DNA of 59,478 nucleotides from Klebsormidium nitens (lineage: Eukaryota; Plantae; Klebsormidiophyceae), in assembly GCA_000708835.1 (NCBI GenBank), contig DF237492.1, positions 1-59,478 of the forward strand. The letters run 5' to 3'. Positions 2,989 to 52,122 of the stretch are shown in pieces. How positions within the stretch are numbered: the first letter of the stretch is position 1; each line of letters starts with the position of its first letter. Below the pieces are notes generated by a model, which did not search any database, had not been told where the DNA came from, and worked only from the letters and a program-made list of their open reading frames with translations. The translations under genes were made by a program, and so were the position numbers.

Positions 2989-5900
2989 TTAGACCGAGGG
3001 TGCTGCAGACCTATGAAAATGGACGTGCTTCCACTCCGCTAAGCCCTTTCCATCTCTTTTCCGCTGCCACACCCTCGTTTCCTGCAAAGACAGACGGGAC
3101 GCCTAAGCTCAGTTTACGGTCAAAACTACCCATGTCGGCGGATCAAGCATTGGCTGAATTTTGATCCCTTATGCGTTCACGCATTCCAGATTGACCATTC
3201 TGAGTCAACCTACACTTCTGACGTCAGACGTTGCAAATCAGAGACTCGAGTCAAACCTTCCAAGCTTAAGGTCGCACTGACGTCACCTCCGGCATCGTAG
3301 CCGTTCACAACCCAAACTACACGTCCCCTGCCTGCTGACGCAAGCACCGGACATCCAATAGCAACAAATGACGTCAGCAAGAACCCGCGCATACCTGGTG
3401 CGCCGACGTGAACCCTGTCTTCGAGGACCCCACGTCTTGTTGCAACCGGACGTACGTCACGACCGCGACGTCTCCATAAACGGACACTTTGGGGGAGGAG
3501 ATGGTGGACTTTGGCCGAATCAGCGCGAGCGATTCCGGGGATGCGGCGTCCGCAACGGGTTTCTTGAGGTCGAAGTAGAACTTGTGGAAGCCGAGGCCTT
3601 CCGCTAGGTGGCCTGGACGGTACCGGAAGACTGCCATTTCAGTCATGTTTTCCGCCTTCAAAGGAACTTATGATTTTCCGTAGAAACATTGATCGGACTT
3701 GTGGGACGTTTCTGAGCGACGGTCTTCTTGAGGTCGAAGTAGAACTTATGGAAGGGGAGGCCTTCCGCTAGGTGGCCTGAACGGAAATGGAAGACGTCGG
3801 AAGTCGAACGGTATGATTCCGCCAACTTGTGGAAGTGAAAGCATTGCTTGATCGAAGTAGAGGTTTCGCTTGGTGGCCTGGACGGAAACGAAAGACGGTC
3901 TGTGTCTCAAATTATAAGTCCGCCGTCGAAAGGTGGCCTGTACGGAAACCGAGAGATGTCTAGATTCTCAATGCATGGTCCCGCCATCGAAGGAAGTGAA
4001 ACCGTTGCGTGGTTACATCAAATAAGCTCGTAGGACGCTTCTCCCGCAAGACAAGCAGAAAAGAAAAAGCCCATTTTCTTCTAGAAGTGCCAGAAACCCT
4101 CCTTTCCCTTCTATCGGGCTTGCAAACCGAAACAACGTAGACCACCTCTTTTCTGTTCAGCAAGGCCTCTTCTCTTCTATTTCCATTCGAGTCGCTCCGC
4201 CTTCCGCCTTGAAATCAGAGGAGGCCACTCGACTTGAATGAGGATTGAGATCGCAGCGAACACGGAACGGAACGCAAACGGGAATCGCGACCCCACCTTG
4301 CGCCTCCGGCTCAAACGCCGTCAGCTTTTCGTCGCACAGCTTCGCATAAGCCTCGTAGTCACCGCCGTCGATAGCGTCCAACAGCATTTGGGTGGCCTCC
4401 AATAAGTTGGCCTGCAAAGACCGGCAAAAAGTAAGCAGTCCATCTAACCTATTTCTCTCTTCTTCTGTCGGGGGGCGAAACGCTCACTTTGCTTACTTGA
4501 TCGAAGAAACTTTTCCTGAAGAGCGGTGACAATGAAGAAGGGTATGTTTGACCAGCGACGCTGAGTTCTGCCATAAAATGTGGGACTTTTCAGAACCTCA
4601 GAATTCAGTATGGAGGGTGCCATGATCGGAAGACGAAAACTGGTGTTTGGATATGAGTCACTAACGAAGACGATACTGGTCAATCCTCAGAAACATTACT
4701 TTCTGAATCGACATCGAGCACACGCTGCTGACGACATTCACAAATGTTCGCACAATGTTCGCTCGTATATGCATTCGGCGCCTGTTATTCTCAGAAGGCT
4801 CCCCAAGAGTTGGGGGCTGCAGAGGATTAGGAAAGGGAAAAGCCATCGCGAATCAAGTGCACGAGCCCACCGCACAACATCATGTTCGAGTCCTCCGGGA
4901 CCGAAGTTTCGTGGCGGCTCACCTGTTGAAACTCTGTAAAGAAGGGCTGGATGCTCCGAAAGACATCCTCTTTACTCCGAGTGGCAGACACCTTCACAAC
5001 AAGAACAAAGTCCGGATGTCAAGCAAAGGGCTCTTACGGGTCTGAGTTTTGAATTGCACAACTCGCTTTAATGCTTCGCTTCAGAAAGCACTGATTGGAT
5101 TCAGAGTGTTAGCAAAGCCAGAAGAGCAGGAAACGGTGGTTGGAATCGGACTCGATGATTAAGCGTCGGTCACATGTCCTTGCCTAGAACGACGACTCAA
5201 AAGTAGTCTGGTAAGTCTACTATGCCCTAACCGCAGTATCCTTCAAGACAGGCGCCCCGGGAACGGGTGGGGTTGGCTTGGTGGTTAGGGCCGGTTGGAC
5301 TGAGGAATGCGTGAAATGTTGGGTTAGAGCTTTTAAATCGGTTGCACTTTTGTTAGGGCACACAGCTGTTAGGGCACACAAGAGTTCCCAGTATCTCAAA
5401 ACGACGAGACGGCTGTTCAACAGGGACACTTGCTCGCCAATCAGAATGGCTCTCGTACCTTCTGGGAGATATGGGCTCCGCAATCGTGGATTGTAAAAGC
5501 TTTCAAATAATGCTGCTGTAAAGAAAATTTCGGTCGTAAGCATGCTAGAAGTCATCGTCTTTACAACGATTCGACTGTTCGACTGACGCGTTCAAACGTC
5601 AGTCTTACTTTGGTGGTCTAGAATCGACCGGCCTCAAACTAGAAACCGACGCCAATACGCCTAACTTGAACCAAGATCTCTTGGGCAAAGTGGAACTACA
5701 CTGGCCAATCAATGGACACTCTCGACCAATGTCCACTTTAAACCGCTCTTTCTTGCCCGGGCCTTACCTTTTTCACCTTCCCTAGGCCATCGTAATGGTC
5801 CACGACGGGCACGCTTTGGTTCACGAACGTCTTGAAGCGCTTCCGTATGCTTTCCATGTTGTCGTCGGACCGCCCGGACGACTTGCCCCGGTCTAGGAGC

Positions 5901-50900: not shown

Positions 50901-52122
50901 CGAGGGGCAGACTCGTCAGAGAGCAGCTGCACGTCAGCAGAGCGGGCTTGTGACGTCAGCAGGAAGGATGAGTTGTCTCGGCACAAGAACTACGTATGTC
51001 GAGTTACTTTCTGACGTAGCCCGTGGGTTGACTGTGGATCAAGAATGTGGCCTTCTGGGGATGCTTGAGGCACTGCAATGACAGCTACACTGCTGTTTTG
51101 CGTCTTTCAAGTCCCACGGATCTTTGAGTACGTTTGCAACTCATCAAAGAGATCAGAATTGAACTTTCTTTCCTATTTCTTTGCCAGTGCAAAGCTTGCC
51201 CTTTGCTGCCCAGTCCTCCAAGGAACTGTTACCAATAGTTTGGACTTTCTGCTTCAAGACATCTTCCTTGCACTCCCTTCTCTTCAGAAGTACCGAGTAC
51301 GACTCACTTCCGCAAGTCGAGCTCAGTTGGAGGCGGCTGGATCAGCTTCACTTGTAGGACGAATTGAGAGGGCAGCTCCTGAAGCTCGGTCATGTAACTG
51401 CAGAAACGAAAACGCAGCTTTTTTCAATCCGATTTTCCAAATACTGATCCCCGTCAGAAGCAGTATATCGAGCTGGTCCGCTGCTTTTTGGAAAGGAGAT
51501 CTCTAATGACTGCCTCCCCTACCTCACATATGGCCACAGACTTATGCAAGTATCTGTCATTTGCAGATGGCACCACATGTGGAAAAGATGGAGATGGAAT
51601 GCCGTAACTGCTGCTCCAGGACATTGTAGATTGAACAATACAAAGCAGAGTAAAGGCTTATGGTGAACAATCTGCAAGTGCAAGACAGACAAGCCCAACA
51701 CTCCCCAAACTTAAGCTGACTGTAACACTACATCAGCGACTGCAACACTACATCAGCATTGCAGCCTTGTCAAATTGCGTCAGCTGCATGGCTTGTTCTC
51801 AAGTGGCACGCCACTCGATGGGCCAAAGAAAAGGTGGCAGGAATGTATGCAAGTTGGTCAAGGGTCCGCATCGGTGGCCAGTATGATGGCGCTAGACAAA
51901 ACTTGAGGTGGTCAGAATAGAGTCTGCTGGATAAGAACGGTGTTCCTTAGACAGGGCACCAGCACTTCCTTTGTAAGTATTCAAATGTGGTGTGAAACCG
52001 GTCTATCAGATTGACCAACACTGCAAGCTGGCGCGAGGTGTCACTGTGCCTCACCTCAGATTGATCCTGCCCGTCTTCTTCGACTCAAAGAGCTTGGGCT
52101 TGAGCTTGTCCATCTTATCCAT
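32999..52122 (-). CDS. DRC7: Dynein regulatory complex subunit 7 (DRC7/CCDC135/FAP50) with N-terminal LRR and Kelch repeats, ~1702 aa, 22 exons
   Basis: Exons 52055-52122, 50806-50926, 49906-50056, 48997-49247, 47934-48155, 47356-47471, 46464-46683, 45855-46019, 45461-45609, 44809-44954, 43828-44168, 43182-43409, 42417-42569, 40913-41882, 40223-40460, 39357-39567, 38288-38413, 37408-37832, 36564-36810, 35909-36058, 34356-34499, 32999-33265; all phases match (5109 nt). DRC7 signatures: RPPFLAPRNECGVEKFLCTTLRP, GDSFDFSIGLCSLLLGAGFDAYCVAGYA, HCWVMV..FFVEPSTG, YHGIEEVWN, RLDGL, DYLSPFL, LKDRLIERANIIQARHDEE, FRIHILEQRL. Confidence 0.9.
33266..33720 (-). repeat. Three well-preserved acceptor echoes of the DRC7 terminal exon, 138-142 bp period
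   Basis: gccagcgcggccgtctcctcgtcgtggcgcgcctg (plus strand) has exon-start equivalents at 33403, 33541 and 33683 (live 33265). All retain CAG. Confidence 0.93.
35100..35908 (-). repeat. Five donor echoes of DRC7 exon 35909-36058
   Basis: gaacgcaccttcgc.acgaccac.gt.tc.tc.tcg (plus strand) has junction equivalents at 35746, 35565, 35416, 35276 and 35134, increasingly degenerate. Confidence 0.9.
44809..48155 (-). other. Kelch-repeat region of the DRC7 gene (exons 5-10)
   Basis: PPVRTGHTM..YVIGG, PAARDGHAAV..IFIFGG, PAPREGASM..VAVFGG, PAPRQDAAV..LYVHGG, PPPRHSHTI..LYLFGG, each followed by a W. Confidence 0.92.
46684..47130 (-). repeat. Acceptor echoes of Kelch exon 46464-46683
   Basis: gagcatgtaaaagtcgct.agccgct..ctc..cg (plus strand) recurs at ~46770-46825, ~46920-46980 and ~47070-47125. 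Confidence 0.85.
48997..52122 (-). other. LRR region of the DRC7 gene (exons 1-4)
   Basis: LxxLxLxxNxL repeats: LKNLKVLKLNYNKF, LKSLKELDLSSNQI, LSCLTKLDLSSNKL, LQNLRDFDCRYN. Confidence 0.92.
49589..49708. repeat. Perfect 60-bp tandem duplication in DRC7 intron 3
   Basis: gtctaggtcaacaagtaggatcagtagagaacctggtaatagaggaagagcttcagcatt occurs twice with no mismatches. Confidence 0.97.

What the first reader, a model, noticed from the sequence alone, without database searches (positions are those of the whole stretch)
3395..50926. Window-wide system of exon-edge echoes: polarised, decaying tandem copies of splice junctions inside introns
Seen: in three unrelated genes on both strands, introns contain serial copies of [intron tail|exon head] upstream of the live exon (3612, 6638, 16086, 18107, 19563, 33265, 36058, 39567, 46019, 46683, 49247) or [exon tail|intron head] downstream of it (13386, 16283, 34356, 35909, 39357, 40913, 44809, 48997, 50806). 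Polarity has no exception among these ~20 edges. Spacing is mostly ~95-180 bp with a mode near 140-165. In the larger arrays similarity falls with distance from the exon, and many copies keep AG or GT. Inference: a recurrent junction-spanning tandem duplication process adds copies next to the exon and pushes older ones into the intron, expanding introns. The spacing is close to nucleosome length, suggesting chromatin-guided duplication. Known context: tandem duplication is a proposed route of intron gain, but I do not know of a description of this ratchet-like genome-wide pattern.
Basis: partly seen in the sequence, partly recalled or inferred. Interest (0 to 1): 0.92.

Follow-up and report, generated by a model that had tools for sequence, protein, structure and literature searches.

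The report
Exon-edge copy arrays inside introns
In three genes of this green alga, about a quarter of the intron DNA is rows of unused, roughly 150-base copies of the neighbouring exon edge plus its splice site, so local duplication has visibly lengthened these introns.

Summary
The same search gave 39 direct and 0 inverted hits. Spacing has a median of 150 bp (SD 21). AG or GT survives in 26 of 32 copies. RNA contigs over 6 kb use only the exon-contiguous sites. Recognisable copies make up about 25% of the intron DNA.

Junction-spanning tandem duplication has lengthened these introns. The exceptionless polarity is not a clue to mechanism: a tandem copy on the exon side would break the reading frame. 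A strict ratchet is not supported. Trees of units are star-like, similarity is not monotonic in the largest arrays, and dead copies share derived bases. Bursts and unequal exchange fit better. Junction preference is 19:1 at face value, but only 5:1 within genes once conserved exon-derived sequence is masked. The nucleosome link is untested.

Changes in the dead copies are spread over all codon positions, whereas changes in the live exon are synonymous. Exon-derived parts decay oddly slowly. The scan noted this phenomenon many times elsewhere in this genome. I found no paper describing it.

The parts
3395..7252 (-). Gene 1: adenylate-kinase domain fused to a CaMKII association (hub) domain. Exons approx. 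7112-7252, 6494-6638, 5798-5965, 4256-4378, 3395-3612.
   Evidence: Pfam ADK profile positions 2-42, 43-94 and 96-147, and CaMKII_AD 3-42 and 30-93, on successive reading-frame pieces. Exon ends are approximate except the two with arrays.
3613..4037 (-). Acceptor-side array of exon 3395-3612. Copies of [intron tail|first ~61 nt of exon], with copy junctions at 3776, 3879 and about 4037 (last one very decayed).
   Evidence: Nearest copy is 90% identical in the exon part, and AG is kept in both measured copies.
6639..6963 (-). Acceptor-side array of exon 6494-6638. Copy junctions at 6748 and 6919, periods 110 and 171. This is the youngest array in the window.
   Evidence: Nearest copy: exon part 97%, intron part 89%. 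It carries a 3-nt deletion and an in-frame TAG, so it is not coding.
11919..21200 (+). Gene 2: IQ-motif-like protein of unknown family. RNA-verified exons are 16086-16283, 17404-17537, 18107-18539, 19563-19890, 20168-20395 and 20856 onward. Upstream exons (13143-13386, 14148-14339, about 14701-14790) are inferred.
   Evidence: Spliced RNA contigs of two runs with GT..AG joints. The reading frame is restored with those joints. No Pfam hit.
13387..13553 (+). Donor-side copy of [last ~33 nt of exon|intron head] of exon 13143-13386. Copy junction at 13520, period 134.
   Evidence: GT kept. The exon end here rests on the open reading frame plus GTGAGC only.
15530..16085 (+). Acceptor-side array of exon 16086-16283. 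Copy junctions at 15934, 15771 and 15616, periods 152, 163 and 155. Exon part is 67 nt.
   Evidence: The RNA joint fixes the live acceptor. A DNA contig covers it with 0 differences.
16284..17175 (+). Donor-side array of the same exon. Five copies of [last 71 nt of exon|intron head], with junctions at 16421, 16602, 16762, 16922 and 17083. It fills about 800 of the 1120 intron bases.
   Evidence: Star-like tree. RNA contigs use only the first GT.
17671..18106 (+). Acceptor-side array of exon 18107-18539. Copy junctions at 17959 and 17811, plus a doubtful one at 17671. Period 148, exon part only 27 nt.
   Evidence: It is detectable from intron-derived sequence alone.
19368..19562 (+). Acceptor-side copy of exon 19563-19890. 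Copy at 19368-19467, period 168, exon part about 75 nt.
   Evidence: The RNA joint fixes the live acceptor.
32998..50928 (-). Gene 3: DRC7 (dynein regulatory complex subunit 7) homologue. At least 21 exons.
   Evidence: phmmer hits, tblastn exon map, Pfam domains of the homologue and of the orthologous locus, exon-only conservation with L001, splice contexts.
33266..33720 (-). Acceptor-side array of the terminal exon (head at 33265). Copy junctions at 33403, 33541 and 33683, periods 138, 138 and 142. AG is kept in all three.
   Evidence: Copy 2 is 36/36 identical to the live exon part while its intron part is 62% identical.
34028..34355 (-). Donor-side duplication abutting exon tail 34356. Two 164-166-nt units at 82-84% identity. 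The exon part is only about 4-5 nt.
   Evidence: 156 bits from intron-derived sequence alone.
35320..35908 (-). Donor-side array of exon 35909-36058. Copy junctions at 35746, 35565 and 35417, periods 163, 181 and 148. GT is kept in all three.
   Evidence: The copies share derived bases not found in the live exon or the orthologue.
39210..39356 (-). Donor-side copy of exon 39357-39567. Period 139, exon part about 36 nt.
39568..39725 (-). Acceptor-side copy of the same exon. Period 125. With a 10-nt deletion the exon part reaches about 62 nt.
   Evidence: The orthologous junction in L001 has copies with nearly the same phase.
40768..40912 (-). Weak donor-side copy of exon 40913-41864. Period 119.
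   Evidence: 41.9 bits; score 39.
44660..44808 (-). Donor-side copy of exon 44809-44959. Period 143, exon part 72 nt.
   Evidence: The exon is confirmed by conservation with L001.
46684..47130 (-). Acceptor-side array of exon 46458-46683. Copies at +297 and +447. AG is lost, and the exon part is about 95-100 nt. One unit in between has probably decayed beyond recognition.
48777..48996 (-). Weak donor-side copy of exon 48997-49247. Period 196.
   Evidence: (score 42).
49248..49414 (-). Acceptor-side copy of the same exon. Period 150, exon part 48 nt.
50549..50805 (-). Weak donor-side copy of exon 50806-50928. Period about 183.
   Evidence: (scores 39 and 33).
49589..49708 (.). Perfect 60-bp tandem duplication wholly inside a DRC7 intron. 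It is the only intron-internal tandem repeat in the three genes, and it belongs to a different size class.
32229..32506 (.). 176-bp tandem pair (73% identity) outside all mapped exons, downstream of DRC7. It is in the same size class, but no junction is known there.
   Evidence: The overlapping ORF has no Pfam hit. There is no synteny with L002.

Best explanation
These are junction-anchored tandem arrays, minisatellite-like, with units of about 150 bp.

1. A local tandem duplication whose unit straddles a splice junction creates two junctions. On average the unit is one third exon edge and two thirds intron.
2. Only carriers that keep splicing at the junction contiguous with the rest of the exon make the normal mRNA. 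The other copy therefore always ends up inside the intron, which explains the polarity.
3. Once two units exist, the array gains and loses units in bursts by unequal exchange or slippage between units, with some homogenisation. It does not grow by a steady one-at-a-time ratchet.
4. Outer units escape homogenisation and decay.
5. The copies are not functional exons. They are unspliced and accumulate changes without regard to the reading frame.
6. The net effect is intron growth.

The founding events are probably more frequent at exon edges of transcribed genes than elsewhere, for a reason not yet known.

Shown here: the anatomy, the forced polarity, non-use in RNA contigs, frame-blind decay, star-like unit trees, the contribution to intron length, and the same phenomenon in a relative.

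Inferred: unequal exchange as the amplifying step, a junction-linked mutational bias, and any role of chromatin in setting the unit size.
For: - Only local direct repeats are present, none inverted or distant.
- Exon edges are fixed by RNA joints, homology and Pfam.
- Copies lie in the adjacent intron at 19 of 72 edges, with none on the wrong side.
- RNA contigs show only the exon-contiguous sites, with low unspliced coverage over the arrays.
- Polarised by the orthologue, changes on the copy lineage fall 16/7/13 over codon positions 1/2/3. Changes on the live lineage fall 1/1/17. Copies also carry frameshifting indels and a stop.
- The largest array gives a star tree. Four others give a trichotomy plus one old outlier.
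- Dead copies at 35909 share derived bases. The nearest copy at 33265 is older than the farther ones by its ancestral synonymous states.
- Periods have median 150 and SD 21.
- Summed periods are about 5.3 kb out of about 21.4 kb of intron (coordinates).
- A related organism's DRC7 locus and its neighbouring PaO/Rieske gene carry the same kind of arrays. Most are at different junctions. Two are at the same junctions with nearly the same phase.
Against: - The exon-derived part of the copies is much better preserved than the intron-derived part, even between two dead copies: 34/36 vs 39/94, 55/66 vs 46/84, 48/54 vs 55/91 (replicated in L001). Whole-unit unequal exchange does not predict this. It needs short-tract conversion from the live exon, an ascertainment effect, or constraint.
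- The narrow unit size (103-196 bp) and the exon-side breakpoint, always 100 nt or less into the exon, are not explained by slippage or unequal exchange.
- With all exon and exon-derived sequence masked, junction arrays outnumber intron-internal ones only 5 to 1 within genes (binomial p about 0.1 against an even target). A junction-specific mutational bias is therefore not proven from this window.
- No population or long-read data were available to show copy-number change.
Confidence: 0.6

Rival explanations
1. A junction-specific duplication process guided by nucleosomes repeatedly copies the live junction unit. Each new copy is inserted next to the exon and older ones are pushed outward, so age rises steadily with distance (a ratchet).
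For: - The outermost copy is the most decayed in all 7 multi-copy arrays (chance about 1/1000).
- The nearest copy is the best in 4-5 of the 7.
- Unit size of 150 +- 21 bp is close to one nucleosome plus a short linker.
- Arrays abut junctions 19:1 at face value.
Against: - Star tree for the six units at 16283 and unresolved trichotomies elsewhere.
- Similarity to the live unit is not monotonic at 16283, 33265 and 35909.
- The nearest copy at 33265 keeps ancestral synonymous bases that are lost in the live exon and in the farther copies.
- Dead copies share derived states.
- No chromatin data exist, and an outer-edge gradient is also expected for any homogenised tandem array.
Confidence: 0.2
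2. There is no junction-specific mutation. Tandem duplications of about 150 bp arise anywhere in transcribed DNA. Those inside exons are removed. Those across a junction stay recognisable far longer because the live exon and splice signals are frozen by selection. So they dominate what can still be seen.
For: - Intron-derived parts fall to 36-65% identity while exon-derived parts stay at 74-100%.
- Only 5 of 19 arrays remain detectable once exon and exon-derived DNA is masked.
- The similarity of old copies starts almost exactly at the splice site.
Against: - After masking, the count is still 5 junction arrays against 1 intron-internal 60-bp repeat in the genes and 1 repeat in about 28 kb outside them. 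Unanchored 150-bp units would be easier to detect than the partial intron-derived parts (window-wide p about 0.006).
- The 166-bp duplication at 34028-34355 is essentially all intron, yet it starts within 5 nt of the junction.
- Exon parts are not skewed to large values, as a pure survival bias would predict.
Confidence: 0.15
3. The copies are kept by selection as working elements. Possibilities are decoy splice sites or enhancer clusters that tune splicing, unproductive splicing coupled to decay, or intron length itself.
For: - Exon-derived parts and splice dinucleotides are better kept than the rest of each unit.
- Several copies are complete pseudo-exons with AG and a GT-like end, for example upstream of 16086 and 39567.
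- Two junctions carry arrays in both species.
Against: - No RNA contig uses a decoy site.
- Copy-lineage changes are spread evenly over codon positions, with indels and a stop.
- AG/GT retention of 26/32 is what about 10-20% neutral divergence predicts.
- Arrays are mostly lineage-specific. Three of 34 comparable edges are shared, against about 1.9 expected by chance.
Confidence: 0.04
4. The arrays are assembly artefacts, or leftovers of whole-exon duplications (alternative or mutually exclusive exons).
For: Repeats of 70-90% identity can be mis-assembled. Tandem exon duplication is common in eukaryotes.
Against: - Contigs from a separate DNA run reproduce four arrays with 0 differences.
- An independent metagenome assembly of a relative has the same structures.
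- Units contain only one exon edge, at most 100 nt of exon, and never both splice sites.
- The middle of the 198-nt exon at 16086-16283 is not copied.
Confidence: 0.01

Closest known systems
Human F7 intron-7 VNTR (37-bp minisatellite whose first unit spans the exon 7/intron 7 boundary; Borensztajn et al. 2006, PMC1557585)
   Same: The first unit of a tandem array contains the live donor site. Each further unit carries an identical, potentially functional pseudo-5' splice site that stays silent. The most upstream, exon-contiguous site is chosen.
   Different: F7 is one locus, with a 37-bp unit, on the donor side only. Here there are 19 edges in three genes, on both donor and acceptor sides, with units of about 150 bp and with decay. 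The arrays contribute about a quarter of the intron DNA, and the same thing occurs in a related species.
Intron creation or change by internal tandem duplication (Rogers-type AGGT duplication; Hellsten et al. 2011, PMC3265369)
   Same: A local tandem duplication duplicates splice signals, and the spliceosome removes the extra copy so the mRNA is unchanged.
   Different: That model makes a new intron from exon sequence. Here an existing intron is lengthened, the duplicated unit spans an existing junction, and no new intron position is created in this window.
Minisatellite and satellite arrays evolving by unequal exchange and conversion (concerted evolution with diverged edge units; general knowledge, not tested against a specific paper)
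   Same: Head-to-tail units, bursts of amplification, star-like unit trees, shared derived states among units, and outermost units most diverged.
   Different: One end unit is a working splice junction held by selection. The unit size is narrowly about 150 bp. Arrays are short (1-5 dead units) and sit at exon edges rather than anywhere.
Introners of Micromonas and Aureococcus (transposon-derived introns inserted between nucleosomes; recalled from memory, not checked here)
   Same: Intron content changes on a genomic scale, with a length scale suggestive of nucleosomes.
   Different: Introners are dispersed copies of one mobile family that create new introns. Here every array is a copy of its own neighbouring junction, there is no similarity between arrays, and there are no terminal repeats (no distant or inverted hits).
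Tandem exon duplication and mutually exclusive exons
   Same: Local duplication within a gene leaves exon-like sequence in introns.
   Different: Units here contain only part of an exon with one splice site. They are not in frame, and they are not seen in RNA contigs.

Membership tests
Junction-spanning tandem array (F7 IVS7 VNTR type) | Head-to-tail repeat whose first unit contains the live exon-intron boundary | tested here: met
   Nineteen edges. The live junctions are fixed by RNA joints or homology, and the copies are in register.
Junction-spanning tandem array (F7 IVS7 VNTR type) | Repeat units carry pseudo splice sites that stay silent while the exon-contiguous site is used | tested here: met
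   AG/GT is kept in 26 of 32 copies. Only exon-contiguous joints appear in RNA contigs over 15300-21200. Contigs can miss rare isoforms, and the other arrays have no RNA test.
Junction-spanning tandem array (F7 IVS7 VNTR type) | Copy number variable between individuals (VNTR) | not testable with these tools
   Only one genome and one read-laying run were available. L003 is identical to L002, so it gives no population contrast.
Intron gain by tandem duplication of an AGGT-containing exon segment | A new intron position absent from relatives, with both intron ends being copies of one exon segment | tested here: not met
   All DRC7 introns with arrays have an intron at the orthologous position in L001 (exon blocks are collinear). 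The units span existing junctions.
Transposon-derived introns (introners) or other mobile repeats | Dispersed copies of one family, terminal repeats or target-site duplications | tested here: not met
   No distant direct hits and no inverted hits in 59 kb. Each array matches only its own exon edge.
Tandem exon duplication / mutually exclusive exons | The whole exon with both splice sites is duplicated, the frame is kept, and use in RNA is alternative | tested here: not met
   Units hold at most 100 nt of one exon end. Indels and a stop are present. No alternative joints are seen.
   Only the length class is shown (median 150, SD 21). No MNase or chromatin data could be laid on the window.

The most novel reading that the evidence does not exclude
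Klebsormidium-type genomes have a mutational process tied to exon edges of transcribed genes. It makes tandem duplications of about one nucleosome's length (roughly 150 bp). The breakpoint on the exon side always lies within 100 nt of the splice site. The process recurs at the same junctions, with the same phase, in separate lineages. Together with short-tract conversion from the live exon, which keeps decoy splice sites fresh, it would be a major and undescribed route of intron growth.
Probability: 0.35. Interest if true: 0.85.

Novelty: new variant of a known kind. Interest (0 to 1): 0.66.

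Why it matters
How introns get longer is usually put down to transposons and slow insertion bias. 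Here about a quarter of the intron DNA of three ordinary genes comes from one visible process: tandem copying of the intron's own boundary, in units of a fixed size.

- If the junction preference and the size class hold genome-wide, they point to a DNA-repair or replication event tied to exon edges or their chromatin, and that can be tested experimentally.
- The arrays are natural experiments in splice-site choice. Up to five intact, consensus-identical decoy sites sit 140-180 nt apart and are ignored on both donor and acceptor sides.
- The dead copies preserve ancestral synonymous states of the live exon, so they can date events and polarise substitutions.
- For annotators, these copies are a source of false exons and false alternative splice sites.

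Tried and rejected
- Codon-usage exon finder trained on the window. It did not separate the strands, so I replaced it with RNA joints and homology.
- Rfam scan: nothing.
- Whether exon-side breakpoints sit at cryptic splice sites. This looked so for 16086, 16283 and 39567, but not for the other arrays, so I dropped it.
- Protein-level constraint on the copies. Rejected, because copy-lineage changes fall 16/7/13 over codon positions and there are indels and a stop.
- Raw excess of third-position differences (106 of 179; 58% synonymous against 24% expected). Polarisation explains it as changes in the live exon, not constraint on the copies.
- A GENECONV-style argument for pair-specific conversion at 33265. 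It was considered but not run. The exon-derived part has about 7 variable sites in all copies, so a run-length test would have no power. The signal is slow change in all copies, not in one pair.
- Run X9 (labelled DNA) as a source of a relative's introns. It shows spliced joints, so it gave no intron comparison.
- Synteny beyond DRC7 to identify the 32229-32506 repeat. L002 shows no similarity downstream.
- L003 as a population contrast. It is identical to L002.
- Seven full-text literature searches. They found the F7 VNTR and duplication-made introns, but no description of this pattern in Klebsormidium or any other genome.
- The organism name (Klebsormidium nitens) comes from earlier scan notes. 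I did not verify it here.

Full report
**What is in the window**

According to earlier scan notes the genome is Klebsormidium nitens. I did not verify the name.

Comparing the 59.5-kb window with itself gives 33 significant hits. All are local direct repeats at offsets of 113-180 bp or multiples of these. None is inverted and none is distant. TRF and the repeat finder show the same arrays. A more sensitive tiled search gives 51 direct hits against 8 inverted ones. Six of the inverted hits are self-palindromes, and none exceeds 40 bits.

**Gene models**

One read-laying run over 15300-21200 gave spliced RNA contigs from two runs, with GT..AG joints. These fix the gene 2 (+) exons 16086-16283, 17404-17537, 18107-18539, 19563-19890, 20168-20395 and 20856 onward. 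The intron after 19890 is a GC-AG intron.

Gene 3 (-) is a DRC7 homologue:
- phmmer with its 305-residue exon found long relatives.
- tblastn of these relatives maps about 21 exons from 50928 down to 32998.
- One relative's gene lies on a 71.8-kb metagenome contig (L001/L002). Its Pfam content is Kelch, CEP76-peptidase-like, MORN_DRC7 and DRC7_C.
- That contig aligns to the window only in the exons, at 68-90% identity. Introns do not align.
- Codon-position divergence between the two is 0.115/0.069/0.358.

Gene 1 (-) is an adenylate kinase fused to a CaMKII hub domain. Successive Pfam profile positions fall on successive exons.

A fourth gene, a GT92 glycosyltransferase at 23146-24096 (-), has no arrays.

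**Checking the observation**

I scanned 72 exon edges with a 181-nt query against +-1.8 kb on both strands. This gave 39 direct hits scoring 30 or more and no inverted hit.

- Nineteen edges have copies, all in the adjacent intron. The three "across the exon" hits are exon-to-exon coding similarity.
Edge 46019 is below my control threshold, and 36058 gave nothing.
- Periods: n=31, median 150, mean 151.5, SD 20.7, range 103-196.
- The splice dinucleotide survives in 26 of 32 copies, often with the whole consensus.
- RNA contigs show only the exon-contiguous joints. Coverage over the arrays is low and unspliced, at depth about 4 against about 60 on exons.
- Contigs from a 2017 DNA run cover the arrays at 15530-16085, 16284-17175, 17671-18106 and 19368-19562 with no differences.
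- Summing the periods gives about 5.3 kb of copies in about 21.4 kb of intron, or 25%: 20% in DRC7, 34% in gene 2 and 25% in gene 1.
- DRC7 introns with arrays average about 770 bp, against about 460 bp without. Subtracting the copies removes most of that difference. This arithmetic uses coordinates.

**Polarity**

A tandem duplication of [intron tail|exon head] gives tail-head-tail-head. Only splicing to the second acceptor yields the normal mRNA, so the extra unit must lie upstream, in the intron. The mirror argument holds for donors. The absence of exceptions is therefore expected from selection. It says nothing about how the duplication arises.

**Ratchet or not**

Aligned units and ML trees show the following.
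- The six units of the 16283 array form a star, with end branches of 0.15-0.24 and inner branches of 0.04 or less.
- In the arrays at 16086, 18107, 33265 and 35909, the live unit and the two nearest copies form an unresolved trichotomy. One much older copy lies outermost.
- The outermost copy is always the weakest. Inner order, however, is not monotonic at 16283, 33265 or 35909.

I then used the L001 orthologue to polarise live-versus-copy differences in seven DRC7 arrays.
- At 33265 the nearest copy keeps two ancestral synonymous bases. The live exon and the two farther copies have the derived bases.
- At 35909 all three dead copies share a derived base absent from both live exons, and two of them share another.

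These patterns fit bursts and exchange among units better than one-by-one addition next to the exon.

**Are the copies junk?**

Raw differences between the live exon and the copies are concentrated at third codon positions (43/30/106). They are 58% synonymous, against 24% expected at random. Polarisation resolves this.
- Changes on the copy lineage fall 16/7/13 over codon positions. That spread shows no regard for the reading frame.
- Changes on the live lineage fall 1/1/17, so they are synonymous.
- Twelve differences are unresolved.

The copies are therefore decaying fossils, and they preserve earlier synonymous states of the exon. They also carry frameshifting indels and a stop. AG/GT retention matches roughly 10-20% neutral divergence.

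**An unexplained excess of conservation**

Within units, the exon-derived part stays much more similar than the intron-derived part, even between two dead copies. Matches in exon-derived versus intron-derived columns:

| Array | Pair | Exon-derived | Intron-derived |
|---|---|---|---|
| 33265 | c2-c3 | 34/36 | 39/94 |
| 16086 | c1-c2 | 55/66 | 46/84 |
| 35909 | c1-c2 | 48/54 | 55/91 |

At 33265, copy 2 matches the live exon part at 36 of 36 positions, while its intron part is 62% identical. The relative shows the same pattern: at the L001 exon-6 tail, the farthest copy is 0.78-0.82 identical in the exon part and 0.28 in the intron part.

The copy-lineage rate is about 0.07-0.10 per site. That is below the intron-derived per-lineage estimate of about 0.2-0.3, and below what the live third-position rate implies. 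Three explanations are possible: short-tract conversion from the live exon, ascertainment (arrays are found through these parts), or faster indel turnover of low-complexity intron DNA. I could not separate them.

**Is the process junction-specific?**

At face value 19 arrays abut junctions. One is intron-internal (a perfect 60-bp pair at 49589-49708). One lies in the 28 kb outside the three genes (32229-32506, period 176).

The frozen live exon makes junction arrays recognisable for longer, which biases this count. I therefore masked all exons and all exon-derived parts of copies and repeated the search.
- Five junction arrays remain above the inverted-hit ceiling: 6638, 16283, 18107, 34356 and 35909. 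The same two non-junction repeats also remain.
- Within genes, where junction-spanning and intron-internal targets are about equal (about 10 kb each), 5:1 is only suggestive (p about 0.1).
- Counting the whole window (junction target about 21% of neutral DNA), 5 of 7 gives p about 0.006.
- The 166-bp pair at 34028-34355 is almost pure intron, yet it begins within 5 nt of the donor site.
- The exon part of the unit never exceeds about 100 nt in 21 arrays from the two species. Its median is about one third of the unit. This is the opposite of what survival bias alone predicts.

I conclude that a bias towards exon edges of genes is likely but not proven here. Its cause is unknown.

**The relative**

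The L001 DRC7 locus has arrays at the exon-6 head and tail and at the exon-14 head. There are weaker ones at four other heads. Its neighbouring PaO/Rieske gene has repeats with offsets of 88-164 bp, plus one at 523 bp.

Of 34 comparable edges, 9 carry arrays in the window and 7 in L001. Three are shared, against 1.9 expected by chance. Arrays are therefore mostly lineage-specific.

The two robust shared cases, however, have exon-side breakpoints within about 7 nt of each other and similar periods. Units are far more alike within a species than between species. This points either to old standing arrays that turn over, or to breakpoint hotspots.

**Comparison with the literature**

Seven full-text searches found no description of this pattern.
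- The closest precedent is the human F7 intron-7 37-bp VNTR. Its first unit spans the exon-intron boundary, and its functional pseudo-donor sites stay silent because the most upstream site is selected (PMC1557585).
- Duplication-made introns (PMC3265369) share the logic but create new introns.
- The arrays fail the tests for introners (no dispersed family) and for tandem exon duplication (partial exons, no frame, no RNA use).

**Relation to earlier scan notes**

The scan has noted this phenomenon on many other pieces of the same genome. My measurements agree with those notes on unit size and on the share of intron DNA. This report adds:
- the forced-polarity argument;
- the polarised substitution analysis;
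- the unit trees that argue against a strict ratchet;
- the masked-sequence test of junction preference;
- the shared phase of arrays in the two species;
- the F7 precedent.

**Verdict**

The arrays are real and reproducible. They are an apparently undescribed variant of junction-spanning tandem arrays, and they have materially lengthened these introns.

Noticed in passing
window 49589-49708: A perfect 60-bp tandem duplication (2.0 copies, 100% identity) lies deep inside a DRC7 intron. It is the youngest duplication in the window. It is not at a junction and is not in the ~150-bp size class.
   Followed up: partly
window 32229-32506: A 176-bp tandem pair (73% identity) lies downstream of DRC7, outside any exon I could map. 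The overlapping 118-aa ORF has no Pfam hit. It could mark an unannotated exon edge, or be a true non-junction member of the size class.
   Followed up: partly
window 19891-20167: This gene 2 intron has a GC donor (GCAAGT...AG). Spliced RNA contigs from two runs support it.
   Followed up: partly
window 2989-7610: An adenylate-kinase domain and a CaMKII association (hub) domain are encoded by successive exons of one minus-strand gene. Another note on this window already flags it (s1-344101).
   Followed up: no
window 23146-24096 (-): A 316-aa open reading frame with glycosyltransferase family 92 / GT2_4 domains. This gene region shows no echo arrays.
   Followed up: no
window 15300-21200, run X9: The run listed as 'DNA?' from organism B shows spliced joints and two variant forms of the exons. 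One form has a different joint (19892 to 20189) with 19 extra letters. It behaves like RNA from a relative, or like a mix of alleles.
   Followed up: no
L002:14040-15023 and L002:17039-17243: The relative's neighbouring PaO/Rieske oxygenase gene (minus strand) also holds local direct repeats, mostly at offsets of 88-164 bp. No such repeats occur in the flanking stretches without called domains. Synteny with the window ends right after DRC7.
   Followed up: partly
window 16086-16152 and copies at 15934, 15771: Each upstream copy of this exon head is a complete pseudo-exon: an AG, 62 nt, then GTAAAG or GTGAAG. Including it would shift the frame. None is seen in the RNA contigs.
   Followed up: partly
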